A stretch of DNA of 63,889 bases, counting the filler, from Octopus bimaculoides (lineage: Eukaryota), in the NCBI RefSeq assembly GCF_001194135.2. It is 6 parts of 6 records of this genome, joined end to end, with 100 filler letters (N's around TTAATTAATTAA, not from the genome) between each part and the next. Parts side by side here need not be neighbours in the genome. Positions count along the whole stretch, not along the records: positions 26,612 to 44,606 come from NC_068984.1; 5 more parts are not named here. One strand, given 5' to 3'. Shown one piece after another: positions 9,425 through 44,606 of the stretch (positions are counted from its first letter, which is position 1; each line of letters starts with the position of its first letter). Below the pieces are notes generated by a model. It did not search any database and was not told the DNA's origin. It saw only the letters and a list, made by a program, of their open reading frames with translations. Made by a program: the position numbers and the translations under genes.

Positions 9425-10519
9425 NNNNNNNNNNNNNNNNNNNNNNNNNNNNNNNNNNNNNNNNNNNNNNNNNNNNNNNNNNNNNNNNNNNNNNNNNNNN
9501 NNNNNNNNNNNNNNNNNNNNNNNNNNNNNNNNNNNNNNNNNNNNNNNNNNNNNNNNNNNNNNNNNNNNNNNNNNNNNNNNNNNNNNNNNNNNNNNNNNNN
9601 NNNNNNNNNNNNNNNNNNNNNNNNNNNNNNNNNNNNNNNNNNNNNNNNNNNNNNNNNNNNNNNNNNNNNNNNNNNNNNNNNNNNTATATATATATATATA
9701 TACATATATATCTGTGTGTCTGTGTTTGTGTGTATGTATATATGTTTCTATATGTGCAATCATGCGTGCGTGCATATATACATATGTTATTGAAGAGTCG
9801 GATTAGCCGTGGATTACATAATTTTTTTCTATTCTATACTATACTTGCACTACCATAAGATATATCCATATGCTATGCGTAGATACCAAAGCGTTTTATG
9901 TTTCTTATAAAAATGTTAGTCTCTTTTCTATGGAATATTCCGAATATATGCGTTAACCTGAAGTTACGGATGTTGGTTTATCGAGATATAAGCTTGAATT
10001 TCGTAGATAAACATGTTTACATATCTTATAAATATATATGTTTAAGTGGATGTGTGTATGTTTGCATATAAACATACTGGTATGAATGTGTGTATATGTG
10101 TATGTGTGTGGGGTGGGCGCAAATGTACATGCAGGCGTGTATATATGAATAACTATGTATGCATATGTGTATATGTGTGCAAGTATGTATGTTTGTATAA
10201 TTGGTAAAAGCAATCATGAAAGACAAAATACAGACTTTCGTTTGAATTTGGTCTTTCATCGTAAAACTATTTACAAAGACAGACATTGATATTTCACATA
10301 ACAAAATATTCAGTTTAGAGATTCATGCTTGAGATATTAATAAGGACCGAAAGAGAACGACCTTCGAATGTTTAACTTATAAAATTTTACAGTTGTTTTA
10401 TCGCATAGCTTTCAATCCTTTCAAATGTAGAGATGCTTTATCTTGGCAGGCACGCATATATAGATATATATATATGTGTGGGGAGAATGTGTATATGTAT
10501 ATGGATATATATGTGTATT

Positions 10520-10594
10520 CATACATAGATGTAGATAGATAGATAGATAGGTAGATAGATAGATAGATAGAGAGATAGATAGATAGATAGGTAT

Positions 10595-10645
<51 letters not shown>

Positions 10646-10646
10646 T
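10520..10646. repeat. (GATA)n microsatellite
   Basis: Long agat run, read directly. Confidence 0.95.
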
Positions 10647-10853
10647 AATATGCGTGCGTTTGTTGCGTATGTATGCTTAAATTTGTATGACTGTGTGTGT
10701 GTGAGAGTGAGAGACAGAGGTACAGGCGTAGCCGTGTGGTAAGAAATGTCCTTCCTCATCACATGGTTTCCGAGTTCATTCCCACAGCATAGCAGAATGT
10801 CTATTTATCCAAAAGCCTTATAACCATATTATATAATGGAAGCCCGTGGTATA

Positions 10854-10892
<39 letters not shown>

Positions 10893-13714: not shown

Positions 13715-13752
<38 letters not shown>

Positions 13753-26265: not shown

Positions 26266-26611
26266 ACAACATCTTGAGTCCAGTGGTCCAAAATTTGAAC
26301 TTTATATTATACGCTTATGTGGTTAACTCAGTTTGATCCTGACTGTACATCCCACACTCTTGGACTTGCATATCTTAACCACTTCCAGACCTTTAAGCAC
26401 CTCTCCTCATCTACATACCAGCACTCCACTCAGATTACCGTTGCAGCTTTGTACTCTTTTGAACTCTACCTTCACAGATCTCACTGGCTATTTTTGTTCA
26501 TATATATATATNNNNNNNNNNNNNNNNNNNNNNNNNNNNNNNNNNNNNNNNNNNNTTAATTAATTAANNNNNNNNNNNNNNNNNNNNNNNNNNNNNNNNN
26601 NNNNNNNNNNN

Positions 26612-26652
<41 letters not shown>

Positions 26653-26757
26653 ATAATCTTATATTTTATTTTATGCTTTTGCATTTTGTGATTATGTATG
26701 TAGAGCATACCCGAATGCGTTTAAAACTGTATCTTACCGTTTCATATCCATCAGTGG

Positions 26758-26957
26758 AAACCGAAACGTTAAAAGGTGGCGATCTTCAGACTTTTAAGAC
26801 AGAGAAATTAGCTGCACCGGTTGAAAGTGAAAGAAAAACTAAAGATTGCTATAGTCTGTATATATGTACCTATCTATATGCATTAGCTACAGTCGTGTGT
26901 AACTTGACCATTTCCACCTTTAGCAGATTAGAAATAACTTTTTCATTGGATAAGGCG
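26758..26957 (+). repeat. ~200-bp repeat, left member of an inverted pair
   Basis: About 85% identical to the reverse complement of 27935-28132. Flanked by the direct repeat TATCCATCAGT at 26745 and 26958. Confidence 0.85.
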
Positions 26958-26974
26958 TATCCATCAGTTGGAAA

Positions 26975-27500
26975 GGTGCTGTGAGCTGGCTGAATCGTTA
27001 GTGTCGTAAAACATACTTTGTTATAATCCTTTCGATTTAGAGTTCAAATCCTATCGATGTCATTTTTATTTTTTCCATTAACAAATGAAGGCCGCGAGCC
27101 GGCAAAATCGTTAGGGCGTGGGATGAAATGTGAAGCGGCATTTCTTCCGGTTTTTTACGTTCTAAGTTCAAATCTCACCGTGGTCAACTTTACCTTTCAT
27201 TTCTCCGAGGTACATAAAAGCAAATACCAATCAAGTACTGGGGTCGATGATATCGACTAACCCACTACCAAATTTGGTATTGTGCCAAAATTTGAAATAG
27301 CTAGCGCATCGAACAAAATGCTTAGCGGTATTTCTTCTGATTCTTTACGTTCTGAAGTCAAACCCCACAGAGGTCTATTTTACCTTTCATCTTTCCAGGC
27401 TCGATAGAATAAAGTACCAGTCAAATACTGTGGTCGAGGGTATTGACTAAACTCCATCACCTAAAAATTGTTGGTCTTGTACCAAAATTTGAAACCATCA
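26975..27500 (+). mobile_element. Cluster of tandem/nested SINE family C copies
   Basis: Recurring gagctggc..aatcgttag, aaaatgcttagcggtattt, gagttcaaat, aaagtaccag..tactggggtcgat and ccaaaatttgaaa motifs. Confidence 0.8.
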
Positions 27501-27934
27501 TTAAATGAAGTGAGATAAACTGTAAAACACCAGGAGAACCCTTATCTAAAATCCCAGTTGTTCTGCATTAAATGCCCATGGCAAGATTATTAGATTTCGG
27601 TTGATTTTATATTGTGTGTAGCGCACCTACAAGAGTAAACTTCTGATGGTCTGAATTAGCATTAAATCTTGCTGAAGATCATTCAAGCCATCTGCTTTTG
27701 TGAAAGACCTGAAAATCATCTCATATCATTCTTCTGTTGATGAAGCACTTTATCATGATGATGTCGGAGCAAAATGATAAGATACCGAATAGCTACTTCA
27801 TAAATCACAAGTTCAAATACAATACTCGATTTTTCTCTCTCTAGTTCACTTAATTTTACACAGCTCCAATGGGCATATTTAAAAAAAACAATATGTATAC
27901 AGCTTCTCCGGGAAAACTAGATGCGATCGTCTAG

Positions 27935-28132
27935 CGCCTTATCCAGTGGGAAAGTTATTTCTAAACTGCTGAATGTGGAAATTGCCAAGTTACACATGGC
28001 TGTAGGTAATGCATATAGGTAGGTACATATACACAGACTATTGCAATCAGTGTTTTTCTTTCACTTTCAACCATTGCAGTTTGTTTCTCTGTCTTAAAGT
28101 CCGAAGATTGTCACGTTTTATCGTTTCGGTTT
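27935..28132 (-). repeat. ~200-bp repeat, right member of the inverted pair
   Basis: Reverse complement aligns to 26758-26957. Confidence 0.85.
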
Positions 28133-30234
28133 TCAGGGGTTCAAATACCTTGAGAAACAGATTGGTTATCTCTGGGAATCAAATAAAATTCAATAAACAA
28201 TGGAAGTCGATGCAGTTAACTATTTTCCATTATTAAAGAAAGAAAATCAACGAAAAGACTGTAAAACCTAAACAAACAAACGGTTCTATAAAAGAAATGA
28301 ATCCTCATTCCTAAATTTATTTTGATTGTCAAATAAATATCAGATTAGTCAGAATCGATTTCTCGTCATTTTGAGCAGTATATATTAAATCGTGATTCCC
28401 TATCTAAAAGCATTCACCACGTAAATGAAAATAAACAGACAAGAATCGAAGCAATTCACTGGCAGATTAACTATATTGTAGTAACGCCGTGCGCATGCGT
28501 AGAATTAAACAACCAAGCGTTCCCGCTCAATTCATTTTCTTTCTTGCTGGCCAGCATAGAGCATGGACGTGTCAAGAAGTGTCTCTAACATTCGAACTCT
28601 GGAGACAGTCTCTTTACGTGTTAAGCTGTCTCTCTACATCTTTCGGACTTACGCTCGACAGCTCGCTCACACCTACATAACAACGTCCCAACAACAGAAG
28701 CTGTAACAAGAACTAAAGATGTATATATTTACCACCTGAATAAATGTTGTTTAAGTTGATAGTCTGGAGTTCAGCGTTCCGTTATATATTCTTATTTTAT
28801 AGTAGGAAAGTCAGGTATACAATCTAAAGATGTATAACCATCTTTCTACTTTAATATGCGTTTTTTAAAAATCTCAAAAACCGGGAAATCCTACTCAAAA
28901 TAATGGGTTTAAGAAGAGACAGTTGTACATACTAAGCAGATGAGATATTGCCTGACTTGGAAATTCATGATTTCATGATCATACTAGAGTTTCGTTCTAT
29001 TTCTGGGTTGTTGAAAATAGATATATTTCCATGGAGAAATCGGTAGAACTAACTATTCATTGACTTCATCACAACATATCAAGTATTTATCATTTCACAA
29101 ATGTATGGGATATTTAAAACGATGATCTCTTTATCAATAATACTGGTGAAAATTGTTGGGGCGGAAATTTAAATTGGTTAATGAAAATTAAGTCAGATGT
29201 TTTCACGGGTTCAAATCTATCTGTGAGTCCTTGTCGGTTGTAACATTATTTGAAAATAAACTGTCATATAATATTATTTTACATTAATGATGATGGTTTT
29301 ACTAATATCAAACCAATTTTCAATAAGTCAGAAATACAACGAAACTCTTGCTGTGATCATGAAGCCGAAACTTTTGAGTTATTCAATATTTTATCCACAC
29401 GACCAGTTCACACACACAGCCGTCTCTTTATAAACCCATTATTTGTGTAGCAGCTTCGGCTTCAGAATTATAGATTAATGGATAAAAATAGCCCAATAAT
29501 CCTCAACATTCTTTAATCTGAAAAGATTTGCTTGTCCAGTTCGTTGTTATTATTTGAATCCTATCAAATTAAATGCTATCATACTCCTTTCGATTGAAGT
29601 CGTATGTTTTCTAAAAGTTTGCTTGATCTTATACAACAAATGGACTATGTAAAAATTAATGATACTTTGAGCAGCTAACAATCAATAGCTTTCACTAGTA
29701 TCATTTATGTCTAACGGCAAAAAATTGCTTGTGGTATTTTCTTTTTGGCTATCTTTATGAATTTAAAAGACGATAGCTCGCTAGTGCCAACTTTTATTAA
29801 GCTTCAATTCCTGTCTATTTATATTTTATTTACTTGGTTTATTCTCTTCAGAGAGAGACAATCTTTTTCCCACCCTATTACAATCTAACACATTGTGCCA
29901 CCCACGGATTAATCTGTATGGAAATTGGTGATGATAATATATTTTCTATAAAGAGAATCCACAATTTATTAAAAAAAAAAACCATGATGAGTATCTGGCA
30001 TCTTTAATAAGATCAACTTTTTGTTGATTTTCCCCCTTAATTTCTGCAGCTAACCTAAAAACCTTTCGTATTGCTTTACTATTATCAATTAAACTTTTTC
30101 CATACGATTTTATTGACCGCGCGCATACGTACACAATTGATCAGTTAAAAATATATTAAAGAAAGCTGTCACTGCATTTCATTCGTGCTAAAGGTAGCAG
30201 TAGTCACTAACAATCAATGACTGGCGCACCTAGG

Positions 30235-30483
30235 TGACGTCACACAGGTAATGTAGGTAGATAACCACATTAAAAAATAAGTAGAACAGTCTAAAGGTGG
30301 TAAGCGACCACCTCGTAACAAAGAAGCTGAGGGGGGAGTTATATTGAAAAAAAAAAAAAAAAAAGGAAGAAGCAGTTTATTTACAGGAATACCTTTCCAT
30401 CCGTTACCATCACAATTGTTTTTATTTATCACAGCTTCGGGGTCTAACGTCAACTTCCGCTTATCGTCCACACTGCAACTGCC
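30235..30483 (+). promoter_or_regulatory. Candidate promoter/5'UTR of claudin-like exon A
   Basis: Perfect CRE TGACGTCA at 30235-30242, GTAAGC donor at 30300 and pyrimidine-rich acceptor ttatttatcacAG ending 30434 (possible 135-nt 5'UTR intron). Kozak-like GCCATG at the start codon. Confidence 0.3.
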
Positions 30484-30751
30484 ATGCCTGAGCGGAATTT
30501 CGCGAAGATCTTCTACTTAGCAGGTCTTACTGGGACGTTTCTAGCAGGATTGTTCAAAGTGATTTGTTTTTCCAGTTCACACTGGATCGATCGACATGAG
30601 GGTGGTGATCCAAATTTCATTAGTGCAGGTTTATGGGAAATATGTTATGATGGTTACAAAAGACCGGACTCTATGAGCGGCCAAAGCTACAAAGGATGTT
30701 ACTGGGTATTTTCAGACGAAGTAAGAGCTCTCCGGGATATTATATTGCCAT
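30484..30751 (+). CDS. Claudin-like (PMP22/EMP/claudin superfamily) coding exon A: N-terminus, TM1 and extracellular loop 1 (89 codons + 1 nt)
   Basis: MPERNFAKIFYLAGLTGTFLAGLFKVICFSSSHW...GLWEIC-x17-CYWVF...IILP shows the W-x14-GLW-x2-C..C signature. Ends CCA T|GTAAGT (phase 1). Confidence 0.88.
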
Positions 30752-31383
30752 GTAAGTACTTTATAAGCAATTATTTACTGGACATTTTTTGGTATGAAAT
30801 CATTACCTCCCTTACGTAAACAAGCTTTGAACTTTCATTATCGTGAGATGTTCGGTTTATCGCATGACTGCTTCCCAAGCTACAATCTGTTAATTCTTGT
30901 TATATTGATATCGATCTTAAATGCTGTTGACTCATTCACATTATTCTATCTTTTACTGGCGTAGTATCGGTTTGTGGTCAACAAAAGTATGTATTTGATT
31001 CAATTAGAACAAACTTCGATGTCTTTTATTTCTAAACTCACTTTTTAATAATCTTTTCACTTTTATTAAGAAACCAGACCAATTTTGTCTCCAAAGGATG
31101 GGAGTGTATCCATATCCATTTCAGGTCCTCTCAAGTTGATGATATCGATGTAGTTGATGTTCAACTTGAATTTCTGCCTGTTGATGTCTGCAGTCAAAAC
31201 ACACACACACACATAATTCTAGAGAGCAACCATTCTAGAGATGTCTTAGCAGTGCCTCTGGGCAAATTTAATGCATTGGACCTTATAGTATTTATTGACA
31301 GCAATTCACAACATGCATAGACCAGAATCAGATTTCTAGACCTGTGAGATCCCCAGGCAAATCAATGCACTGGGTCCTATAGT

Positions 31384-31548
31384 TAGGGCCTGCCTTAGGG
31401 TTGCTGGCGCCAGGTTAGCAGAACTTCGGTGCCCTTACAAGTATAGTTTTTTAAAACTTTCGCAAGGAGCTAAACTGAAAATGTAGACTAAAAAACATAT
31501 GACATCCTGGGCGACTGCCTGAGTTGCTGGTACCTTAAGTCAGCCCTG
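31384..31548. mobile_element. 165-bp hAT-type MITE
   Basis: Perfect 8-bp TSD CCTATAGT (31376-31383 and 31549-31556). Imperfect TIRs tagggcctgccttaggg / ccttaagtcagccctg. Confidence 0.85.
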
Positions 31549-32276
31549 CCTATAGTAGTAGTTAGTAGTAGTTACAGCATACATAGATCAGAATTGGGCC
31601 CCTAGACCTGTGAAACCCCTAGCAATTGCCCTGTGTGCCAATGTCTTAAGATGGTACTGGGTAAGAGTTTGGATGAAATACTTTGTAGGAGAAGCAGATA
31701 AATTTGAAAGAAGAGACAGAGGGAGTATGTATTATGCTGGTGGTGGTTGTAGTGTGTTGATGAATGAGGAGTTAACAACCAATTTCGAAGACATTTTTGG
31801 TTCAATGCAATCAAGAATAGTCTGATAAGTTTTAGATAATTGAACCTTGACTAATGTAATTCTAGCTGCTCGTGCAATCTGGCAGGTGATACCAATCAGT
31901 GGAATAAATTACATGATGGTAAGAAGAGGAGGTCTAACATCTTGCGCAGAGCTCTTTCTTGGGGAGACATGAAATATTCAAAAAAGTTACAGGATCCCAG
32001 TTTATTTATTCTTTAACAACCAGTAACCATTCCATCTCTGCAAACATATTCTGATGTAAGACTTTACTTCTTCCTCATGGCATACAATTTATTCTCATTA
32101 AGATGGTTTTGTGGAGAATTTGCTGGCTGCTTTCTCTACAAAACTGATAATGCTTCATTGCAGCCAGTAAGTTGCAATCATAACGCTTTTCTTGAAATAA
32201 AACAAAACAGAAAAACTGTAGAATATGAAGACACTAGTGATGGATTGAGATGGCAAATTGTATAAAAAAGAGATTT

Positions 32277-32433
32277 AGGCATGGCTGTGTGGTAAGAAGC
32301 TTGCTTCCCGATGACATGGTTTCAGGTTCAGTCCTACTGCTTGGCACTTTGGGCAAGTATCTTTTGCTATAGCCTTGGGCTGACCAAAGACTTTGTGAGT
32401 GGATTTGGTAGACAGAAACTGAAAGAAGTCTGT
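32277..32433 (+). mobile_element. SINE family A head
   Basis: ggcatggctgtgtggtaagaagcttgcttccc...ggttcagtcc...gacagaaactgaaagaag, followed by (AT)n. Confidence 0.85.
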
Positions 32434-32527
<94 letters not shown>

Positions 32528-32679
32528 CAACTTATGCGAAGACATGACCAACCATGGGAAATATGGCCGTTCTTGGAAACAGGTGAGGGTTGGCAAAAAG
32601 AAGGTCATCTAGTTGTAGAAAATCTACCTCAGTTAATCCTGCCTGGTCCAGGCAAGCATGGAAAACCTCCTCCTCCTCC

Positions 32680-32900
32680 TCATTATCATCATCACTGTCT
32701 GTTTTCCATGCAGGCATGGGTTGTATAGTTTGACAGGAGCTAGCAAGTCAGAGAACTGCACCAGGCTCCATTGTGTCCAGTTTAGGCACGGTGTCCTGTG
32801 GCTGGATTCTCTTCCTAACGCCATTCTCTTACATTGCACCAGCTCCACTGCTTTACACATGGCACCAGCATGGCTGTTTTTGACTTGGCACCAGTACACA
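32680..32900 (+). mobile_element. SINE family B copy
   Basis: Family B body motifs after a (cct)n/(cat)n lead. Confidence 0.75.
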
Positions 32901-33044
32901 TAAAAAAGTGAACACTAAAATGGTGACAGTGATGAAATGCAAGTTTATTATTTCCCCACATGTGATGAAGACATCATTGAATAAAAGACTTCAGTCCTTA
33001 AATATTGGAAAAAAAATATGTGTATATTTTTCTTCGTGATTTTA

Positions 33045-33240
33045 GCACAAGGCCTGCAGTTTCGTTGTGTGGTGCCAAGTATTTTAACATCAAACCCAGT
33101 ACTTGAGTGGTATTTATTTTATCAACCTTGTAAGGATGAAAGGTAAAGTCAGCTTCAACAGAATTTGAACATAGATTGTAATTGGCGGAAAACCATTAAG
33201 CATTTTGTTTGATGTGGTAACAATTCTGCCATCTTGTCAC
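33045..33240 (-). mobile_element. SINE family C copy
   Basis: tagcacaaggcctgcag...agtacttgagtggtatttattttatcaacc...aaggtaaagtcagc...gaatttgaac, i.e. family C reversed. Confidence 0.7.
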
Positions 33241-33599
33241 TTTTGAATATGGATATATTTCATGCATGTTAATACAGATCTTTGCTTTCAGATTTAAACT
33301 TTATTTTCAGATCAATTCATTAACACAAGAAAAACCGAGTGAGTCAATTGATGCATTTTGAAATTTTAATTACACACAGTTCCAAAACTATTGTAGATTT
33401 CAACATCATGGTGCTTGACTTTTCATGCTATTATGATATTCTTAGACACTATATATCATAGGTTGCTTGCACCAACTGTAAAAAAAATAAATAAACCACT
33501 TCCTATAAGGATCACGTGTGCCAATTGATGCAATGGCAACTTTTGAAAACTTGCACCTGCTTTTTGTTTATAAATACATGTGACTGCATTTTAGATATT

Positions 33600-34230
33600 C
33601 AGTAATTGCTCACAAAAACAAACTGCAGTTTGGTCAGCGCAATTCATTACAACAGAAGGGAATTGCCAGAAGTAGTAGAACAGGTGAAACCAGTGCCTGA
33701 AACTGTGGTTTTGAAATCCACAGAAAAGCCTACTGTCACACTTATATCATACCAGTGTTAAAAATCAAAGTCTGTTGTTGTTTTGAGTATCTTGCATCAA
33801 CATGTAGAAGATCCTTCTGAAAACAACCTCAAAAAGAAGCCTGACACCATACTTCTTTTATAACAAGACTAAGGTAGGCGTAGACGTGATTGACCAAATC
33901 GCAAAGCTTTATTCAGTCAAGGCAAGCAGTAGACAATGGCCAGTGCACGTTTCTTTATGATATTTTGGATGTTGCTCTTAAAACAGCTGGGTAATATACA
34001 CGTGTTTGTAACTCAGTCATTAGTCGATGGGAACATATTGAAAACGTTGCAAAAGGAATTTGTGGTGATTCACCTTGCAGTCGTTCATGTAACTATCAAA
34101 CACCCTTTTGAGGAAAGCTCTACCTCTGGAAATAAAGTCAGATGTACATGGGTGAAAAACAAAATGCCGAAACAGAACCACAGAAATGTATGGAGTCTAT
34201 AAAAAAAAACCTGTGTATGTAAATGTATGT
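33600..34230 (+). mobile_element. piggyBac transposase relic (C-terminal catalytic part and Cys-rich tail)
   Basis: With frameshifts it reads SLVSAIHYNRRELPE...TVTLISYQC*KSKSVVVLSILH...KKKPDTIL/YNKTKVGVDVIDQIAKLYSVKASSRQWPVHV/YDILDVAL/NSWVIY, then KCRNRTTEM. Confidence 0.85.
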
Positions 34231-34399
34231 TAAAATGTTCTGATGGATGTTTAGAATTTCAATAAATTTCTTTTTATTTCGTAAGGATAAATTTCTTTCA
34301 AAATATCAAACAATTGTGACTAATATCATCGTGAAGTCATAAAATTCATTAGAGTCATACATTTAATAAAGGTTTTCCACTTCTCCTTTTCTTTTTTCC

Positions 34400-34872
34400 T
34401 TCATCATCATCATTGTCGTTGCTTTTCATGTTGGCATGGGTTGGACAGTTTAACTGAGGACTGGCAAGCCAGAAGCCTGTACCAGGCTCCAATCTGATCT
34501 GGCAGGCTTTCTACAGCTGGATGCCCTTCATAACACCAACCACTCCAAGAGTGTAGTGGGTGTTTTTTATGTGCCACCAGCATAGAGGTCAATCAGGTGG
34601 TACTGGCATTGACCACGCTCAAATGGTGATTTTTATGTGCCACCGGCATGGGAGCCATCAGGTGACACTATCAATGACCATGCTCGAATAGTGCTTTTGA
34701 CATGCGACCAGCACAGGGGCCAGTCAGGTGACACTGGCAACAACCACGCTTGAATGGTACTTTTTACGTGCCACCAGCATGAGAGCCAGTCAGGTGACAC
34801 TGGCAATGATCGCGCTCGAATAGTGCTTTTGACATGCCACCAGCACAGGGGCCAGTCAGGTGACACTGGCAG
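34400..34872 (+). mobile_element. SINE family B with ~4.5 internal 66-bp units
   Basis: Family B body plus repeated gccagtcaggtgacactggcaa...gctcgaat.gtgcttttg units. Confidence 0.85.
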
Positions 34873-35079
34873 AAAAACATCTTTGCATCAACTGATGCAT
34901 TCTGGTCCTTAAAGGTAGGTGAAAAATTCAGTCCTTCTAATGTTAAGAAGAATTATAAAGCTTTACTCATTAATAAATTAGTTACACTTACATTGAAGCC
35001 ATTTGTGTACGACACAAGTGTTGATGTTGTCTGGTATTATATTATTTTGATATTGCCTGATTTTATATCTCTTATATGT

Positions 35080-35412
35080 TACTTGTTTCAGTCAATTGAC
35101 TGTTGTCATGCTGGAGCACCACTTTGAAGGATTTGTCATTGAATGTATTGACCCCAGTACTTATTTTCTTACAAGCCTGGTACTTATTCTATTGGTTCCT
35201 TTTACTGAACTGCTAGGTTATGAGGATGTAAACACATGGTTGTGGACACACACACACACACAAGAGAATTCTTTCAGTTTCTGTCTACCGAATCCTCTGA
35301 CAAGGCATTGGTTGACCTGAGGTAATAGTAGAAGACACTCTCCCAAAGTGCCATGCTGTGAAACTGAACCCAGAACCATGTGGTTGGGAAGCAAACTTCT
35401 CACCACACAGCT
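35080..35412 (-). mobile_element. SINE family A, near full length
   Basis: acttgtttcagtcaattgactg..catgctggagcacc tail and reversed head ending cttctcaccacacagc. Confidence 0.85.
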
Positions 35413-36231
35413 CCACCTGTCCCTACACTGCTTGATATATTATTTCAAATAAATCAAAAAGTAGTTTGTTGCTCTTCCCAATAAATTGATCTCTAACTCT
35501 GCAAATGAAGCCCCAAATTTGTTCATAAAGGATTCTTTGAATTCAAAAAGTTTGTTGAATTTATTTATATGGAGAACACAATTATAAATATAAAAAATAT
35601 ATAACAAATGCAATAAAATAAATTAATATCCTCATTATGAAACAAAAGGACTTTTCTAGAAACTTTTTCAATTCAGGTTTCGGAGAAATGATATTGTTTC
35701 ATTTTTGTTACAGTTACATCAAAATTGGGCTATTTTGATGCCAGAGTAATTTGGATACAGTCTTCAGGGTCCAATTGATTACTCTGTTTTGTTTTTATGT
35801 TTCATTAGAGTGGAAAGTCCTTATTCGCAAAAATAGCTTGTTGCAAAAGGCAGCAACTCTTTGACTGCCCCCCCCCCCTCATGCCTGAAGAAAACTTTCT
35901 GTTTTAACACAAGGGATACATTTTTTTAGATAATTTTACTTATGTCTAATGAGTTCTCATTGCTCCAAGAATTTCATTCTTGCCCCACTTTTAGTTCAAT
36001 TTCTATGAAAATAATTTTCACATTTATTTTCTATATCAGATTATTGTTGAATAACTCTAGCCAACTCTTCTGAACTAAAGACTATGGTTATATAAAGGTA
36101 GCTTGTCAAATGAACAGGGCTAGTGTGACATTCCGAACATATGGCTGTTAAGGTTACTAAACAAAGGAGCTTGTGTGCAGTTACTTAACAAGCTACAAAT
36201 AATTATGAAATCTCCCATAATTTACATTCTA

Positions 36232-37470
36232 TTGGGTCATCCCATAAATAATGTGGTTTTGTCAATTGCATGAAATAAAAGTCAACTTGCAATAAAGGTA
36301 GGTAGTAATTTTACCTAGTATTTATTCTTAGTGCAAGTTGTGAAGAGTGCAGTTCGATTTTAACAGTTATTTTTTCAAAACTATAATGGAAGTTACAAAG
36401 GAGCATATTTGGCTTATTTTACTTTGAGTTCAATAAAGGCAACAACACAATAGAAAGTGTGAAGAATATTAATGCAGTATATGAGGATCGGACAATAAGT
36501 GTAAGCCAGTGTCAATGATGGTTCCAGAAGTTCCAAGCCAGAAACTACAAGCCTAGAAGATGAGCCTCATCCTTGAAGATCTATAGAGCTCAACGAGGAT
36601 GTCTTGCAAACTCTGGTGGAACAAAATCCCATTGTAACTCTTGAGGAACTAACAGGGAAGCTTGGATTTGGTCATTCAACCATTCATCAACACCTGCTTG
36701 CCATTGAAAAATCAGGTTCCTCACAAACGTTCCAAGTCTAATCGCATGCATAGAGTGAATATGTGTTCTACTTTGCTGTCACATCTCATGAATAAACCCT
36801 TTTCGGACTGGATAGTGACTGGTGACGAGAAATGGGTTATCTATAAAAATGTGAAGTACCAAAGACATTGGGTAGAGAAAGGAGAAACACTGGCACCCCA
36901 GGCTAAAGAAGGTCTTCATCCATGTAAAGTGTTGTTATCTGTTTGGTGGGATATGAAAGGTTTAGTCCACTTTGAACTTTTAAACCCAAACCAAATGATA
37001 ACAAAGGAGATCTACTGCGAGCAGTTTGAGCAGTCTAAGTCAGCACTAGAAGGAAAACCACCATCTTTGATTTCAAAATGAAAGGTGTCCTTCCATCAGG
37101 ATAATGCTTGGCCACATACAGTGAAGATGACAATCCAAAGGCTGAAGTAGTTTGAATGGGAAACTATGCCCCACCCACCATATTTGCCAGGCATTGCCCC
37201 TCCTGATTATCATTTATTCCGCAGTCTTCAAAATCATTTGGATGGAAAAAATATGAATTCTGTAGACGAGGTGAGAACAGTACTGGAGAAGTGTTTTTCA
37301 TGACGGACAAGTGGATTTTGGAAGAGGGGCCTTGCAAGTCTACCAGAAAGATGGAAGAGCATTGTAGAAAATGAAGTAGAGTATATTTTAGATTAAAAGA
37401 GAACTTTATCTTAATTTTGAAAAATAAAAGTAAAAAAAAAAACAACTGCATTATTTATGAGATGACCCAA
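36232..37470 (+). mobile_element. Full-length, defective mariner (DD34D), 1239 bp
   Basis: TA TSD on both sides; TIRs ttgggtcatcccataaataatg and its reverse complement match 21/22. ATG at 36386. Motifs IVTGDEKW, FHQDNAWPH and YLPGIAPPDYHLF with a 34-residue D-D spacer. Multiple stops and frameshifts. Confidence 0.95.
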
Positions 37471-38469
37471 TACTATCTCTTAAATCTAAAGTCCAGTTAA
37501 ACAAAAAGCAAGCTACATAACCTAGAACCTTGTGTTGGAAGAGGTTTGTAGTTTTATAAAAAGCAGTTTTATAATGAGTTTTAAACAGTAATTTATATAA
37601 TCTTGTTTTGGATATTTTATTATGAATTACTAGATTGTCCTAGTCATAACTTTAAAATACATCCAGTAGAGGGCCACTATTGTTCCCAGGTCTTCTTTGA
37701 TCTGAAGTAGTAGTACCTACTTGTGTCCCAGCTAAGATTAATTAGCATGTCATGGAATTACAGACACTCAAATAGACCCAAGGCTGATGAGGTCTTTCAG
37801 CTCTTTAACTGTTCATCTAAGGGAAGGTAACTCCATACAGATCTTGCAAACTGATAACTACTGGACTTGTTGCACTTGTACCAGACCAATCCAAGTTTGA
37901 AGGACATGAGTGTTGTCTGGTTTTGCACGAACCAAGCCCATAATAATAATATTCATCATGCAGATTGTTCAACAAACCGAGACATCAGCATTAGCATTGT
38001 CACACTTTCTTCATGAGTCCAGCAGCAATAGGGAAAGATGTAACTGGGATAGGTTGAGGATACTACTAAAAGTATGCAGCTTTGACCCTGCATATGGGCA
38101 GCCATAGGGTGATGGTTGTTTTCTAGTCTTACACCATGGGGCTGTGCCTTGCTGAACCCTCATTCATTAAAGCAATGAGAGTTCATAATTGCTTAATAAG
38201 GAAAGAAATGATTGGATGGTCAAGACTGGAGCATCTTTGATTTTAGGTCAACTCGTTCATGGTTGATCTCAGATAAAACTATTACTACTCCTACAACAGT
38301 GGTTCCCAAAGGCTTGACTTTTTCACTACTCCACACACTCCATATGTTCTCGCTCAATCATTGCTAGACAGCCCAAATCGTCATCATCATCATCAACATA
38401 ATCACCAACTTTATAGAAACCACTGTTGCTTCAAAAAACATCAATAATTTGGAAAATCAAAGAAATAAA

Positions 38470-38930
38470 AAACCTCGAAGATTTTAAGTTTATTTATAGT
38501 AAACAGATCTGGCGTCACATAAAAAGCAACCACGCTGATACCACATACAAAGCACCTGTTGTTGGTGCTGCATAAAAAGCTCTTGTGCTGGTGCCACATA
38601 AAAAGCACCCTTGCCGATGGCATGTAAAAAACACCATTCAAGTGTGGTCGATGCCAGTGCCACCTGACTAGCTCCTGTGCCGGTGGCACATAAAAAGCAC
38701 CATTCGAGCATGGGTGATGTTAGTGCCGCCTGACTGGACCCCCAGCTAGTGGCATGTAAAAAGCACCCACTACACTCTTGGAGTGTTTGGTGTTAGGAAG
38801 GGCATCCAGCTGTAGAAACCATGCCAGATCAGATTGGAACCTCGTGCAGCCTCCTGGCTTGCCAGTCCTCAGTTAAACCGTCCAACTCATGCCAGCATGG
38901 AAAGCGGATGTTAAACTATGATAAGCTGAT
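38470..38930 (-). mobile_element. SINE family B, reverse orientation, with 66-bp units
   Basis: ggtgttaggaagggcatccagctgtagaaacc...catgccagcatggaaagcggatgttaaac is the family B body reversed. Confidence 0.85.
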
Positions 38931-39064
38931 GATGAGAATAAATAAAACAATCATAACTAGGAATTGAACCTTGAGCATAAATGTATATCACTGGCAACTC
39001 TTCTTCCAATTACATGTAATAGTAGTGGTGTGGTACTAACTAACTATATCCAGTTCTAATTTAT

Positions 39065-39262
39065 TGGTTTCAAATTTTGGCACAAGGCCAGCAATTCATT
39101 TTTTGGAGAGGATGACGTCAATTACTTCGGTCTCCAGTGTACAACTGGTACTTTTTTAAATCAACCCTGAAAGAACAAAAGGCAAAGTCGACTTTGGTGG
39201 AATTTGAACTCAGAATGTAAAGTGCTGCTAAACATTAGCCCTGTGTGCAAATGATTCTACTA
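39065..39262 (-). mobile_element. SINE family C copy
   Basis: ggtttcaaattttggcacaaggccagcaatt...ggcaaagtcgactttggtggaatttgaactcagaatgtaaag. Confidence 0.8.
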
Positions 39263-39374
39263 ACTTGTCGCCTTATCCACAATTCTAATTTAATTTGATT
39301 AGGAACAATACTAATTTTAAAAATAGGTGTATGGTCAATTGAATATGTTTTTACCCATAAGTATATTATAGAAG

Positions 39375-39663
39375 CAGTGGCAAACTGGGTCTAAGAGTAT
39401 TGGTTGTCAGGAGACTAAGGGGTCCCACTCGCAACTACAATACTATCATTTAATGTTTTTTTTTTGTTAAAAATATTCTTTTCAACTGTCTACAAACACA
39501 GTCAGGCTGAAATAATTAATACATTTTTCCAGGAGTGAATAAAAAACTTGAGGGGATGGGCCCTTTAGATACTAACATGAGCCCCCCCCCCATATATGGA
39601 TTCTAATGTTGCAGGGGCCCACTTGCCATCGGGCAAACTGGTAACCTGACCAGTCCACCACTC
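39375..39663. mobile_element. 289-bp hAT-type MITE
   Basis: 8-bp TSD TATAGAAG (39367-39374 and 39664-39671). Imperfect TIRs cagtggcaaactgg / ccagtccaccactc. Confidence 0.75.
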
Positions 39664-40649
39664 TATAGAAGTATATTATAGAAGTCATATCTCTGCCAGA
39701 AATCATATCCTATTGTTAAAAAATAATTGAATACTGTAATCCTAGATTCACTAGGTCTGAATAAAAATAACAAAAGCAAGCAAAAAAGACTGGATAGTGA
39801 TGGCCGATATTCATTTGATTATAGGTCCGTATGATTAAGGCTGATTTTAGATAACAGAGTGACATCAACTGTGTTTGGAATTGAACTTAGAATGGCAAGT
39901 TCCAAATTTGCTACTATAATTATCCTCTCCAACGTCTGCACTGCTCTTCTTTAACACACTGCCATCGAACTTAAGCATAAGCTTGTATAACGGAAGTTAA
40001 TAATGTCTTCTAACTTGGAGTTGAAACTGGCTTGGCTTGCTCTAAATCTCACCATTTGAATTGTAATAATAAAAAAAAGATAAAAAAAGAAAATAAAACG
40101 TCAACGTTTGCTGTTTATTAAAAGTTTAATTGTAAACTTTAAAATTCCGTCTTTCCAGCTATGATCAACCTATATATTTAGTGTTGTATACTTACAATTT
40201 CGTTTCAACACTTAGATCCTTTTCCCTTTTATTAAATACCCCTTTAACGACGATTAAGTCTTTTTGTATATGTCTATCTAACTTAAAAGAAACCTTTATC
40301 TTTTCATTGTTTGGTCTGCTGCTACGTCGATTTGTATTTTAAATAAACTGCATTGCTATTCTAGAACATATATCCTAATATTGTTTTATATGTATATTTC
40401 CTGAATAATACTGGTATGTATATCTATTTAGATTTTCCTATTCTTTTGCAAGTTTCCCGAGTGATATGTGGCCAACTGCTATCAATTTACTGTTGTCACT
40501 TGTTGAACTACTTGGCTGATTTTGTTACTCACCTGTCCTTACCTGAAGATAACAAGCATAAACAATATAGTGACTTCAAAAGTAGGTAGGTAGCCAGTCT
40601 GACTGCCTGATCGTTGTTAGTTTCCTGTGTGTCTCGTCAGAGCAAGCAG

Positions 40650-40664
40650 CCAATCGTATATAAG
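40650..40664 (+). promoter_or_regulatory. Candidate core promoter of claudin-like exon B (CCAAT and TATA boxes)
   Basis: agCCAATcg-TATATAAG about 140 nt upstream of the ATG at 40803. Confidence 0.45.
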
Positions 40665-40802
40665 GCGGCCATCAAAGCAATTATATTATATCGACAATAA
40701 CTTGAGGTTAATTTTCACCTCAAATATATTAAATATATGTAGTATTGATCAACGTAGGAACATTTACTCGTCGATAAGAGAGACGTTCGATATTGTTTAA
40801 AC

Positions 40803-41058
40803 ATGTCGAGTTCTCGAATGTTTATATATGGCTTTTCCTTGAGCGGTATAGCCCTTTTTTGTATGGTGATAGCTTTCTCCAGTCCAAACTGGTTGGAATC
40901 TTTCGAACAAGCCAACAATAAATTCGTGAAACTCGGCCTTTGGGAAACTTGTTTCAATGATTATACATTTTATCAAGACTACCAAGGAAAACGCTATAAA
41001 GGTTGCTGGTATATTTTCTCCTACGAATATAGACCGATCTGGGAGTGGCTGTCACCTC
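40803..41058 (+). CDS. Claudin-like (PMP22/EMP/claudin superfamily) coding exon B: N-terminus, TM1 and extracellular loop 1 (85 codons + 1 nt)
   Basis: MSSSRMFIYGFSLSGIALFCMVIAFSSPNW...GLWETC-x17-CWYIFSYEYRPIWEWLSP resembles Drosophila Sinuous/Kune-kune/Megatrachea-type claudins. Ends CCT C|GTAAGT (phase 1). Confidence 0.92.
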
Positions 41059-42000
41059 GTAAGTTCATAACTTTCCTTCCTCTCTTCTTAAATTCTTTCT
41101 ATAGTTGCTCACGTATTAACGAAAATTAGGTCGACAAAGATATGATCTTATTGTGTCGACCGTTTTATTCTATGTTGCACTATTTCAAAATTTCGTTTTC
41201 ATGTGGTATTCTTTTCTGTATAGATACAAAAAAACATGAAATAGTAAAGTATAATTAACTAACCGTCAAGTTAATAAATTTCTTAGAAATTGGTGTCACG
41301 TTAGTTACCTGTTTACACCTTTAATTAATCATTACCAAAATATGGCGATATGTGAAACTTTGAAATTAGTTTAGTTATAAACAACGGTCATTAAGTTATT
41401 TTCCGATAGTAAAGCATAGAACTTTCTCAAGATTAGTAGATTTTAAATACGTTCGTTTGTTAATTTGTATTTTTAAATATATTTTCCTTCTGTATCTTGG
41501 GAAAATATTGTCACCACGCATTGATCCAATTTAGTTATGTATTAAAACGACAAGTATTAGATTAAATGTGTGTTTATGAATTGTTTAATTTCACCTGTAA
41601 TTAAAATTGTAACACAAGAAATGGCGATTATATTTATTATGATACAGGTAAGACAATAGACTATCAAATAACTCGTAATTTATTATCGACAATTCGTTAT
41701 TAAAAATATCTATCAACAGGTGATTTATTACCTCTGTAACTTAACGACAAGGGCTGTGACGGTTATAATTTTCTAAAACACTTGGAAAATGGAAAAATAA
41801 ATAAGACTGTGCGACGAACTTCGCAATGTTGGCTTATATCTATAGATTTTGCACGGATACGTGGGTGTTAGGATTTATATTTTACTAACCGAAATTAACT
41901 TTGGTTAATAATTGTTTAAGAGTGTTTAGCTTACACAGACTTTGTAGTGTGTTTTATGTGTGTGCGTGTCCGCGTTATTAGGCATATACACAAACACACA

Positions 42001-43250
42001 CACAGGGTGCGTAAGATATTTGAGGACAGATTTATGTTTATAAAAAAAAAACATATAATAATAGATAACTTTATTTATCAAAAAATGCTATGAGAATAAA
42101 AATAAACCTTTTCTATAATGTTATTCAATAAAGCCATCTTCAGCGTCAACAACTGCTTCTATACGAGATCTAAATCATCTACATGCTCGAATCAAGTGGT
42201 TCTGGTTCATTCTGGACATTACCTTGACTATGGTAGCTTCCAAAGAATCTTTGGTGTTATGGGCGTGTTCATTGACCTCTCTCTCAACATCACTGGACAT
42301 GTAATAATCCAATGGATTGAGATCTGGGGAATTAGGAGGCCAAATGTTAGGAGTTGTGTGATCATGAAAATTTTCAGTCATTCCTGTGTTACTAGAGCCA
42401 TGTGTAATAGGGCAGAGTCTCAGTGGAACAGATATGGCCTTCCATTGCATACACTGTCTATCCAGGGCTTAACAATTATTTCCAGGACCTCAATGTAGGC
42501 AGCAGAGTTAACTCTAAGGCCTTGTGGAAAGAAGTAAGGGGGTATCACATGTCTTTCATTGCTGACAACCCCTAAAACCATGACATTTGCAAGACATTTT
42601 GCATGCATAACACTTGGAACTGCAGAAGGGCCTGCACATAACCATTTGTCATTTCTTCTGTTAACTTTTTGATCTTGGTTGAAGTTTTTCTTGTTTAAGA
42701 AAAACCAAATCAAATCTTCTTCTGCTGGATATTTCAGTTTGTTCAAGAACCTTTTAGATCTGATGTAGTGACTTTCTTTTGCTTTTTCTGACAAATTGAC
42801 CTTTCCTCATCACATAAGACATCATTTGATGTCTTCATGGACAACATTTCTGACTGTTCCTTCTGACACATGGAGATCTTTTGCAATTGACCTCATGGAC
42901 TTCCTGGGATTGTAATCATTGGTCTGTTGAACTTTCTGGATAAATTTAGGTGTTCTGATGACTTCAGAGCATTTAGGATGCTTTTTATGCTTTGATACTG
43001 GTGATACGTTTCCATCTTCAATCTCTGGCTCCGTAAAAACTTTGTAGACGAAAGATCTGGCAACTTTTAAAAATTGAGATATTTCTAAATCACTATACTC
43101 AGTTTTTGTAACCACAATAACAGCATGCCTCTTCACTTCTAGAGTAAGCTGAGGGTCTGCCATTATTGTTTTCTGAAACAAAGATTATATTGAGTTAGCA
43201 AAAAATGCAGCAATGACCTCAAAAAGGTGTCCTCAAATACCTTACACACC

Positions 43251-43255
<5 letters not shown>
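42001..43255 (-). mobile_element. Full-length, defective maT-like (DD37D) Tc1/mariner element
   Basis: 28-bp TIRs (cacagggtgcgtaagatatttgaggaca) match 26/28. Three broken ORFs cover the transposase: HTH region, FH*DSA and WPPNSPDLNPLDY. The D-D spacer is ~37 after repairing a small deletion. Confidence 0.9.
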
Positions 43256-43288
<33 letters not shown>

Positions 43289-43504
43289 TTATTTATTTAT
43301 ATGTATATATAAATATTGTATAAAAGATTGTGGGTAAGGCCAGAACAATGCGAAGTAAATGCAAGGCATATCACAAGAAAACAAATATATGAATTAATGT
43401 AGACTTACCTTGCATTCAATATTTTGGGGTTATGACCCCGTTTTCAAGAAATCAATGAATGTTGCCGATGTGCATGTGTGTGAGCATATGAAATAATTAT
43501 TAGG

Positions 43505-44180
43505 GCACCAAGCTGAAAGAACCCTCAGAGCGTCAAGCATAATATTTTGTTGGGTCTTTACATTCTGAGTTCAAATCCTGACGAGGTAACATTGTCATTT
43601 GTCATTCCAGGTCAATAAAATGAAGTACCAATCAAGTCCTGGGTTGATAGTATCGACTAATTCTCTCACTTCAAAATTTATGGCATTGTGCCTATTGTAG
43701 AAAGGGTTATTATTATTATTATTATTAAAGTAGCGAGCTAGCAGAATCGTTAGCACGCCGGGCAAAATGCTTAGTGGCATTTTGTCCATCTTTACGTTCT
43801 GAGCTCAAATACCGCTGGGATCGATTTTTGCCTTTCATCTTTTCAGGGGTCGATAAAATAAGTACCAGTTGAGTACTGGGCTGTTGTAATCAACTTACGC
43901 CCTCCCCACAAATTTTCAGTCCTTGTGCCTATAGTTGAAAGGATTATTATTATCATTATTATTATTATTATTAAGGCAGCGAGCTGGCAGAATTGTTAGC
44001 ATGCCAGGCATAATGCTTAGCGGCATTTTGTCTATATTTACATTCTGAGTTCAAATTCTATTGTGGTTGACTTTGCCTTTCAGGCTCAATAATATAAAGT
44101 ACCAGCTGAGCACTTGGCCAATGTAATTCTCTTAGACCCTCCCCCAAAATTGCTGGCCTTGTGCCAAAATTTGAACCATT
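43505..44180 (+). mobile_element. Three head-to-tail SINE family C copies separated by (ATT)n
   Basis: Copies at about 43505-43708, 43728-43945 and 43972-44180. Confidence 0.85.
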
Positions 44181-44263
44181 GTTATTTTGAAGCTAAAGCA
44201 ACATACCTATACAAGTGTGAACCGTTTCAGAAAAATGGGTATTCTTAATGAGATTTTCTAAGA

Positions 44264-44606
44264 ATGGAAACCTGCCACTTCAGGAAACCTGCCAGTCACC
44301 TAGTCACCTACCGATCCGGCAGACACTCTAGCCAAATCGACTACATCCTCGCCAGAAATAGGGAAAGAGGGCGGCTTATAAATGCCAAAACCTACCCTGG
44401 CGAAGAATGTACCCCACAACATAGATTAGTAGTTAGCGACTTTGGGATCAAGGCAAAATGGGTGCCCAGAATTAGACAGGCTTGGAGGAGAAGGGTGTGG
44501 AAGCTTAAAGACCCTGCAAACGGACAGAGACTTAGAGACAAGTTACTTGAAGCATTTAACGAAATAGAAGGGGATATAGCATCATACAACGTGGAAGACA
44601 ATTGGA
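44264..44606 (+). mobile_element. RTE-clade LINE ORF2 fragment (AP-endonuclease C-terminus), running into a gap
   Basis: HFRKPASHLVTYRSGRHSSQIDYIL...GEECTPQHRLVVSDF; no stops up to the N gap. Confidence 0.9.

What the first reader, a model, noticed from the sequence alone, without database searches (positions are those of the whole stretch)
30484..41058. Candidate variable-constant claudin locus: two paralogous first exons, each with its own TM1 and extracellular loop 1, ending at the same phase-1 donor
Seen: exons A and B each start with ATG, are free of stops, align without gaps over 64 aa with only 24 identities, and stop at the same codon (IILP+T, WLSP+C) before GTAAGT. The 10 kb between them has no N gaps and is largely explained by transposons. 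I found no TM2-TM4 exon there. Known: ECL1 determines claudin pairing and paracellular selectivity, and clustered protocadherins and UGT1A use tandem alternative first exons joined to shared constant exons. Inference: one gene produces two claudin-like isoforms with interchangeable extracellular loops on a common TM2-TM4/C-tail. I am not aware of this being described for invertebrate septate-junction claudins. Testable constraint: a shared exon 2 cannot begin AA, AG or GA, which would give a stop after exon A. A start of CN would give the family-typical LP-S-W and SP-P-W.
Basis: partly seen in the sequence, partly recalled or inferred. Interest (0 to 1): 0.85.

Follow-up and report, generated by a model that had tools for sequence, protein, structure and literature searches.

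The report
Two tandem claudin-like first exons
Two diverged copies of the first coding exon of a claudin-superfamily membrane protein sit 10 kb apart on one strand with no later exons between them, so they are probably alternative first exons of one gene, as in vertebrate claudin-10 and claudin-18, but the shared exons lie outside the sequence and the link is unproven.

Summary
Exon A (30484-30751) and exon B (40803-41058) are both on the + strand. Each starts with ATG, has no stops, and ends one base into a codon before GTAAGT. They align without gaps (26/79 identical, E=3e-18) and both carry the claudin-type W..GLW..C..C loop signature.

The family is Pfam Claudin_2 (PF13903), about 210-220 aa. 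Relatives have three exons: e1 (TM1 plus the whole first loop), e2 (TM2) and e3 (TM3-TM4-tail).

tblastn with ten full-length relatives and motif probes find no e2 or e3 anywhere in 26612-44606. The e3 probe finds 8 of 8 e3 copies in control loci.

Exon A is not a decayed orphan. One other species carries an A-type exon (P0034, 51% identical) with the same T|GT junction, and the flanks do not align.

An Owenia fusiformis homologue has three first exons in tandem before a single e2.

Alternative first exons are therefore the best reading (about 0.55). The constant exons lie outside the piece, so it cannot be proven here.

The principle is already known from CLDN10 (1a/1b) and CLDN18 (1a/1b). 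The "septate-junction claudin" label is unsupported: the fold matches TARPs, LHFPL4, MP20 and claudins about equally. Interest is moderate.

The parts
30484..30751 (+). Exon A (A-type first coding exon). ATG, 89 codons plus 1 base (T). Encodes TM1 and all of extracellular loop 1, with W34, G49-L50-W51, C54 and C72.
   Evidence: Orthologue P0034 is 51% identical with the same junction.
30752..30757 (+). Splice donor GTAAGT of exon A, phase 1.
   Evidence: The junction CCA T|GT[AG]AGTA is conserved in L003.
40803..41058 (+). Exon B (B-type first coding exon). ATG, 85 codons plus 1 base (C). Encodes TM1 and extracellular loop 1, with W30, G45-L46-W47, C50 and C68.
   Evidence: Relatives are 55-75% identical and end at the same ..LSP|C-GT boundary.
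41059..41064 (+). Splice donor GTAAGT of exon B, phase 1.
40650..40665 (+). CCAAT (40650-40654) and TATATAAGG (40657-40665), about 140 nt upstream of the exon B ATG. A candidate core promoter for B, read by eye.
   Evidence: not tested statistically
30235..30242 (+). Palindrome TGACGTCA (CRE-like), about 240 nt upstream of the exon A ATG. A candidate promoter element, read by eye.
   Evidence: not tested
30417..30434 (+). Pyrimidine-rich tract ending in CAG, 49 nt upstream of the exon A ATG. A possible 3' splice site, which would mean A is preceded by a non-coding leader exon.
   Evidence: inference only
30758..40802 (.). Interval between A and B. No N, no e2 or e3. It holds a mariner relic, a pair of long inverted repeats, SINE-like copies and microsatellites. 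On the favoured reading it is part of intron 1 of the A isoform.

Best explanation
A and B are two alternative first coding exons of one claudin-superfamily (Pfam Claudin_2) gene. Each encodes its own start codon, TM1 and the complete first extracellular loop. Each ends in phase 1 at a strong GTAAGT donor. Each is spliced to the same e2 (TM2) and e3 (TM3-ECL2-TM4-tail), which lie downstream of 44606, outside the piece. B is probably transcribed from its own TATA/CCAAT promoter; A starts further upstream. The two products would share everything from TM2 onwards and differ in TM1 and ECL1, which are 33% identical.

Shown: the two exons, their homology, phase and donors; the absence of e2 and e3 between and around them; conservation of the A-type exon.

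Inferred: the existence and sharing of downstream exons, the promoters, and any functional difference between the isoforms.
For: (1) Same strand, same phase, gap-free homology at E=3e-18.

(2) In relatives the gene has three exons. e3 is easy to detect: tblastn gives E from 1e-10 to 1e-27 across phyla. The SWS[FY]G probe finds 8 of 8 e3 copies in Owenia, Liolophura and Biomphalaria. In the piece, ten full-length queries hit only A and B and the probe gives 0 hits even with one mismatch.

(3) A is under selection. P0034, from another species, is 51% identical, with 45 invariant residues that include the family hallmarks, the same length class and the same T|GT junction. The flanks do not align. 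A kept coding exon needs an acceptor. The nearest candidates lie beyond B.

(4) The Owenia locus L007 has e1a, e1b and e1c in tandem, each with ATG and a phase-1 donor, and no e2 or e3 between them. A single e2 follows. e1b ends in T, like A.

(5) The AlphaFold model of relative P0033 (pLDDT 81) places the e1/e2 boundary exactly at the ECL1-TM2 junction, so e1 is a self-contained module.

(6) The same design is established in CLDN10 and CLDN18.
Against: No constant exon is visible, and there is no transcript evidence.

In every other mollusc-like locus examined the B-type gene is an ordinary compact three-exon gene with one e1. It is paired head-to-head with a paralogue that has its own exons (L001, L002, L005, Biomphalaria L011). 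In the chiton the paralogues are complete tandem genes. So complete-gene duplication is the family's usual mode.

Only one A-type orthologue was found, on a 3.5 kb contig with no context.

A scores below the Pfam cut-off on its own and has a Lys inside the predicted TM1.

e2 is weakly conserved, so a very divergent private e2 could escape tblastn. A private e3 should not.
Confidence: 0.55

Rival explanations
1. A and B are first exons of two separate paralogous genes. A's own e2 and e3 lie beyond B's gene, so B is nested in a very long first intron of A, or the two genes interleave.
For: The family normally duplicates as whole genes. The piece ends only 3.5 kb after B, so nothing downstream can be seen. 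Owenia has three e3 copies after its single e2, so multiple downstream exon copies do occur in this family.
Against: Same-strand nesting of a paralogue inside intron 1 is not what tandem duplication produces. In Owenia no extra e2 exists between the e3 copies, which argues against concentric separate genes there.
Confidence: 0.2
2. In this genome exon A is an orphan left by a partial duplication or by loss of its downstream exons. It is intact by sequence but not part of any productive mRNA.
For: No e2 or e3 follows it within 10 kb. The interval is full of transposon insertions. A is the more divergent copy and scores below the Pfam cut-off. Almost no A-type relatives are in the databases.
Against: The 89-codon frame is open. 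The ATG, all hallmark residues and a perfect GTAAGT donor are kept. An orthologue 51% identical has the same junction while its flanks are unalignable. That pattern means long-term purifying selection, not drift. A very recent loss of function cannot be excluded.
Confidence: 0.15
3. A and B are mutually exclusive internal exons behind one shared promoter and a non-coding leader exon, rather than exons with separate promoters.
For: A pyrimidine tract ending in CAG lies 49 nt upstream of the A ATG, and a CAG|GTAATG lies just after the CRE-like site.
Against: B has a textbook CCAAT plus TATATAAGG about 140 nt upstream of its ATG and only a poor acceptor-like sequence. This is a sub-variant of the best explanation, because the proteins would be the same.
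Confidence: 0.08

Closest known systems
Vertebrate CLDN10 (claudin-10a/10b, exons 1a/1b)
   Same: Alternative first exons, each encoding TM1 and most of ECL1, joined to common downstream exons. The isoforms differ only in that module (PMC6862131).
   Different: CLDN10 is a classical claudin (PF00822) with proven splicing and proven anion versus cation selectivity. Here the family is the divergent PF13903 group of unknown function, sharing of exons is unproven, and the two arrangements must have arisen independently.
Vertebrate CLDN18 (18.1/18.2, exons 1a/1b)
   Same: Exon 1a-exon 2 and exon 1b-exon 2 junctions define two isoforms (PMC12317400). Claudin-18 isoform A2 is also the best sequence match in the PDB for the family profile (E=2.5e-5).
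   Different: The sequence relationship is remote. Tissue-specific promoters are demonstrated for CLDN18 and not here.
Clustered protocadherins and UGT1A (variable first exons, constant exons)
   Same: Tandem paralogous 5' exons, probably each with its own promoter, cis-spliced to constant exons.
   Different: Those arrays have many variable exons and are fully documented. Only two exons are seen here. The variable exon here encodes one TM helix and one loop, not a whole ectodomain or catalytic domain.
Owenia fusiformis locus of CAH1776236.1 (L007)
   Same: Same protein family. Three tandem e1 copies with ATG and phase-1 donors, and no private e2 or e3 between them.
   Different: The whole locus is visible there: one e2 and three e3 copies. 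The Owenia e1 copies are not specifically related to A or B (31-35% identity), so the array arose separately. There is no transcript proof either, and the deposited model looks wrong.
Ordinary family members (Biomphalaria LOC106072805, scallop LOC110465767, bee proteins that NCBI names 'claudin')
   Same: B is 50-53% identical to their e1 and has the same exon boundary.
   Different: Those genes have a single e1 and sit head-to-head with a paralogue. The window has no such partner within 14 kb upstream of B and has exon A instead.

Membership tests
Claudin/PMP22/EMP/MP20/TARP superfamily (Pfam PF13903 Claudin_2) | Match to the Pfam model above its gathering score | tested here: met
   B alone scores 30.7 bits against a 29.1 cut-off. 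A alone scores 16.7 bits, below the cut-off, but it covers only a third of the model. Full-length relatives score 54-143 bits.
Claudin/PMP22/EMP/MP20/TARP superfamily (Pfam PF13903 Claudin_2) | ECL1 signature W ... G-L-W ... C ... C after TM1 | tested here: met
   A has W34, G49-L50-W51, C54 and C72. B has W30, G45-L46-W47, C50 and C68. These positions are invariant across the family alignments.
Claudin/PMP22/EMP/MP20/TARP superfamily (Pfam PF13903 Claudin_2) | Four TM helices with a beta-sheet ECL1; fold match to solved members | tested here: inconclusive
   Met for relative P0033: AF2 pLDDT 81, four helices plus strands; Foldseek probability 1.0 to TARP gamma, LHFPL4, claudin-3, claudin-15 and MP20. 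For the window gene only TM1 and ECL1 are visible.
Septate-junction claudins (Drosophila Megatrachea, Sinuous, Kune-kune type) | Specific orthology to those proteins, or junctional localisation | not tested
   I made no comparison with the Drosophila proteins. Source names are 'uncharacterized protein', or 'claudin' from automatic naming. The fold is equally close to TARPs and LHFPL4. Localisation is not testable with these tools.
Septate-junction claudins (Drosophila Megatrachea, Sinuous, Kune-kune type) | C-terminal PDZ-binding tail | not testable with these tools
   The C-terminus of the window gene lies outside the piece. Relatives end in -PRF, -THY and -TRY, not the classical -YV.
Variable first exon / constant exon gene (CLDN10, CLDN18, Pcdh, UGT1A type) | Two or more paralogous 5' exons in tandem on one strand, each with ATG and a donor in the same phase | tested here: met
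Variable first exon / constant exon gene (CLDN10, CLDN18, Pcdh, UGT1A type) | No private downstream exons between the variable exons | tested here: met
   tblastn with 10 relatives. Motif probes give 0 hits or chance-level hits, with positive controls at 8 of 8. A very divergent e2 cannot be fully excluded.
Variable first exon / constant exon gene (CLDN10, CLDN18, Pcdh, UGT1A type) | Each variable exon has its own promoter | tested here: inconclusive
   CCAAT plus TATATAAGG upstream of B. TGACGTCA and an acceptor-like tract upstream of A. Read by eye only.
Variable first exon / constant exon gene (CLDN10, CLDN18, Pcdh, UGT1A type) | A single set of constant exons downstream, with transcripts joining each variable exon to the same acceptor | not testable with these tools
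   The piece ends at 44606 with no e2 or e3. The genome is not in the searchable collections. No RNA data are available.

The most novel reading that the evidence does not exclude
This uncharacterised lophotrochozoan Claudin_2 family repeatedly builds cassette genes. Arrays of alternative TM1+ECL1 first exons flank a single TM2 exon: two copies here, three in Owenia. In Owenia an array of three alternative TM3-ECL2-TM4-tail last exons follows as well. One locus could then produce a combinatorial set of four-TM proteins with swapped extracellular loops. This would have arisen independently of vertebrate CLDN10 and CLDN18.
Probability: 0.25. Interest if true: 0.6.

Novelty: new member of a known kind. 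Interest (0 to 1): 0.42.

Why it matters
In claudins the first extracellular loop sets pairing and charge selectivity. In TARP and LHFPL relatives the extracellular part contacts partner receptors. Swapping TM1+ECL1 on a constant body is therefore a compact way to make two functionally distinct membrane proteins from one gene.

Vertebrates do exactly this in CLDN10 and CLDN18. A confirmed invertebrate case in a distant branch of the superfamily, together with the Owenia array, would show that this exon boundary is a recurrent evolutionary 'socket'. It would also give a handle on a conserved but unstudied protein family.

There is a practical side too. These loci are mis-modelled by annotation pipelines: the Owenia model joins e1a to an internal part of e1c, and the chiton model fuses two genes.

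Tried and rejected
Exact look-ups of the read-through ORFs of A and B found no contig, so I could not extend the piece downstream.

Word-index homologue searches with A alone and with A plus P0034 found nothing beyond P0034. A metagenome scan with A-type peptides and one with an A-specific GLWE[IV]CY[DN]G[YW]K DNA pattern found nothing.

The contigs carrying the A-type exon (L003, L004; 3.5 kb) and the loosely A-like P0080 and P0082 (L008, L009; 1.2-1.4 kb) are too short to show any context.

Haliotis 'isoform X2' (P0054) is not on record, so I could not test whether its isoforms differ in e1.

The script machine was lost. That ruled out an HMM search of six-frame translations, dN/dS and neutral-evolution simulations. 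The Pfam tool refuses translations containing stop codons. I used degenerate DNA probes with positive controls instead.

Rejected ideas:
- A as an inverted copy of the conserved head-to-head partner gene. Inverting a whole gene would leave its e2 and e3 between A and B, and A is no closer to the partner e1 than to B-type e1.
- Specific orthology between A and Owenia e1b, despite the shared T junction and the H-W motif. Identity is only 31%.
- Weak tblastn and probe hits at 34574-34860 and 38729-38752. These are the 66-nt tandem repeats next to the long inverted repeats, not e3.
- The 'PWF' ORF at L007 29398-29511. It has no acceptor and hits an early stop.
Full report
**1. The observation**

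Exon A runs from the ATG at 30484 through 89 sense codons (…RDIILP). One further base (T, 30751) precedes GTAAGT. Exon B runs from the ATG at 40803 through 85 codons (…WEWLSP). One further base (C, 41058) precedes GTAAGT.

BLASTP aligns the two without gaps over 79 residues: 26 identities, 57% positives, E=3e-18. A degenerate probe for G-L-W-x-x-C hits exactly these two sites in the whole window, against 0.06 expected.

**2. What the exons encode**

Pfam places both in Claudin_2 (PF13903). B scores 30.7 bits, above the 29.1 cut-off. A scores 16.7 bits.

A profile search of 1.84 billion representatives found 527 relatives. The full-length ones are 200-230 aa proteins of molluscs, annelids, brachiopods, nemerteans and arthropods. 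Their sources call them 'uncharacterized protein', or by automatic naming 'claudin'. They score 54-143 bits on Claudin_2.

An AlphaFold model of the Biomphalaria member P0033 (pLDDT 81, pTM 0.77) has this layout:
- TM1: residues 2-30
- four strands: 35-76
- a short helix: 80-89
- TM2: 92-119
- TM3: 125-158
- TM4: 174-208

Foldseek matches it at probability 1.0 to TARP gamma subunits, LHFPL4, claudin-3, claudin-15 and MP20, with no clear preference. By sequence the best PDB hits are claudin-18 isoform A2 and MP20.

So this is a member of the claudin superfamily, but nothing assigns it to septate-junction claudins. The exon 1 boundary (…LNP|P92) falls exactly at the ECL1-TM2 junction. Exon 1 is therefore a complete TM1+ECL1 module. 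A and B both keep the W…GLW…C…C signature.

**3. Gene structure in relatives**

tblastn on five other loci shows a three-exon gene:
- e1, ending in phase 1 after …[LN][SP]P
- e2, about 51 codons, starting (P)WF…, phase 1 at both ends (Owenia: ctttcag|CC TGG TTT … TGT G|gtgagt)
- e3, covering TM3-ECL2-TM4 and the tail, with the strongly conserved IFG.K..DR.W.P.PD.N.LSWSFG

In L001, L002, L005 and Biomphalaria L011 the B-type gene is compact (3-5 kb). It lies head-to-head, a few hundred bases apart, with a paralogue that has its own exons. In the chiton Liolophura, e1 and e3 alternate along the strand (e3 3458; e1 10133, e3 13851; e1 19602, e3 22066; e1 27319). These are complete tandem genes, two of which the RefSeq model fuses into a 431-aa protein.

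**4. No later exons in the piece**

tblastn with ten full-length relatives at E≤10 hits only A and B in 26612-44606. Everything else is noise. The e3 probe WSNTGGWSNTWYGG gives 0 hits even with one mismatch. The same probe finds 3 of 3 e3 copies in Owenia, 3 of 3 in Liolophura and 2 of 2 in Biomphalaria. The e2 probe gives a chance-level number of hits, and none of the + strand hits starts a plausible exon. The PD.N..SW probe hits only tandem repeats inside a transposon.

So A has no private e2 or e3 before B, and B's own e2 lies more than 3.5 kb downstream.

**5. Exon A is a maintained exon**

Among all fetched relatives one stands out. P0034 is a 92-aa read-through ORF from sequencing runs ERR12370324 and ERR12374250. 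It scores 105 bits and 51% identity with A, but only 60 bits with B. It shares 45 residues with A, including the A-specific FS.SHWI.RH and GLWE.CY.G.K.P, and it ends ILP + T|GTGAGTA.

At the DNA level the exon aligns while both flanks do not. That is the signature of purifying selection on a coding exon and its donor. The A/B duplication therefore predates the split between the window species and the species carrying P0034, and A has been kept since. I found no other A-type sequence.

**6. A parallel in Owenia**

The locus of the Owenia fusiformis model CAH1776236.1 (L007) carries, all on one strand:
- e1a (10001-10265, ends C|GTAAGT)
- e1b (19435-19711, ends T|GTAAGT)
- e1c (23429-23684, ends C|GTGAGT)
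- one e2 (about 24207-24359)
- three e3 copies (about 26576-26809, 29813-30142, about 31204-31500)

Each e1 has its own ATG. Each e3 is an open frame running to a stop, behind a strong pyrimidine-CAG acceptor in phase 1. There is no e2 or e3 between the e1 copies, and no e2-like frame between the e3 copies.

The deposited model joins e1a to an internal part of e1c, which looks like an artefact. The Owenia e1 copies are not specifically related to A or B (31-35% identity), so the array arose independently. It shows that first-exon arrays without private downstream exons do occur in this family.

**7. Surroundings**

About 140 nt upstream of the B ATG lie CCAAT (40650-40654) and TATATAAGG (40657-40665). 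This is a plausible core promoter. Upstream of A there is a TGACGTCA palindrome (30235-30242), then CAG|GTAATG, and a pyrimidine tract ending in CAG at 30434. A may therefore have its own promoter, possibly with a short non-coding leader exon. These are readings by eye.

The A-B interval holds:
- a degraded mariner (Transposase_1, E=8e-22), which sits between a pair of long inverted repeats at 34421-34655 and 38671-38905, each arm adjoined by 66-nt tandem repeats
- an inverted pair of SINE-like copies next to (TA)n

From memory, this SINE plus (TA)n looks octopus-like. I could not verify the organism.

**8. Interpretation**

A conserved coding exon with a strong donor must splice somewhere. 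Nothing suitable lies before B. A and B end in the same phase. In relatives e2 begins C-N, which would read SP-P-WF after B and LP-S-WF after A.

The most economical model is two alternative first exons sharing e2 and e3. I put it at about 0.55. The rivals are:
- separate genes, with B nested in A's first intron (0.2)
- A as a recently orphaned exon (0.15)
- mutually exclusive internal exons behind one promoter, a sub-variant giving the same proteins (0.08)

None can be settled without the downstream scaffold or transcripts.

**9. Comparison and novelty**

The design is not new for the superfamily. Human CLDN10 uses exon 1a or 1b, which differ in TM1 and ECS1 and give anion- versus cation-selective channels (PMC6862131). 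CLDN18.1 and CLDN18.2 are defined by exon 1a-exon 2 and exon 1b-exon 2 junctions (PMC12317400).

Three literature searches for an invertebrate case found none, but the search was narrow. I file the finding as a probable new member of a known kind. Interest is moderate (0.42). The extra value lies in the Owenia array and in the chance that this family uses cassette exons at both ends.

Noticed in passing
L007 (Owenia fusiformis CAIIXF020000001.1:61232024-61268832) 10001-31500, + strand: Three tandem first exons (10001, 19435, 23429), one exon 2 (about 24207-24359) and three intact exon-3 copies (about 26576, 29813, 31204). All have matching splice phases. The deposited protein CAH1776236.1 joins e1a to an internal piece of e1c. 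This may be a cassette gene with alternative 5' and 3' exons.
   Followed up: partly
L001 9051-10255; L002 9408-10246; L005 about 467-1332; L011 9272-10168: In four other species the B-type gene sits head-to-head with a paralogue, first exons a few hundred bases apart, each with its own later exons. This is a conserved divergent gene pair, presumably with a bidirectional promoter. The window has no such partner within 14 kb upstream of B.
   Followed up: partly
L010 (Liolophura sinensis CM072722.1) 10001-22203: RefSeq protein XP_064596691.1 (431 aa) is a fusion of two complete tandem family genes (e1 10133/e3 13851 and e1 19602/e3 22066). A third e1 lies at 27319 and another e3 at 3458.
   Followed up: partly
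window 34421-38905: About 4.5 kb bounded by 235-nt inverted repeats (85% complementary), with 66-nt tandem repeats just inside each arm. The interior holds a degraded mariner transposase (36662-37078; its frame continues, broken by stops, to about 37400). It looks like a long-TIR or foldback-type element with a mariner inside.
   Followed up: partly
window 32284-32430 (+) and 35229-35411 (inverted copy): SINE-like repeat ending in ...GTGAGTGGATTTGGTAGACAGAAACTGAAAGAAGTCTGT followed by (TA)n. Not verified.
   Followed up: no
window 42175-43181 (- strand) and 44264-44606 (+ strand): Downstream of B there are three consecutive - strand ORFs. One has HTH-type DNA-binding hits, and another carries a DDE-like ...PPNSPDLNPLDYY... 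motif. Together they look like a broken Tc1/mariner transposase. A + strand ORF runs off the end of the piece and looks like a retroelement endonuclease by eye. It has no Pfam hit.
   Followed up: partly
window 30719-30726: Inside exon A, GAA|GTAAGAGC forms a second donor-like site in phase 0, 31 nt before the real exon end. It is not conserved in P0034, so it is probably chance.
   Followed up: no
window 40650-40665 and 30235-30252: CCAAT plus TATATAAGG lie upstream of B. TGACGTCA, immediately followed by CAG|GTAATG, lies upstream of A. Both are candidate promoter or leader-exon signals, read by eye only.
   Followed up: no
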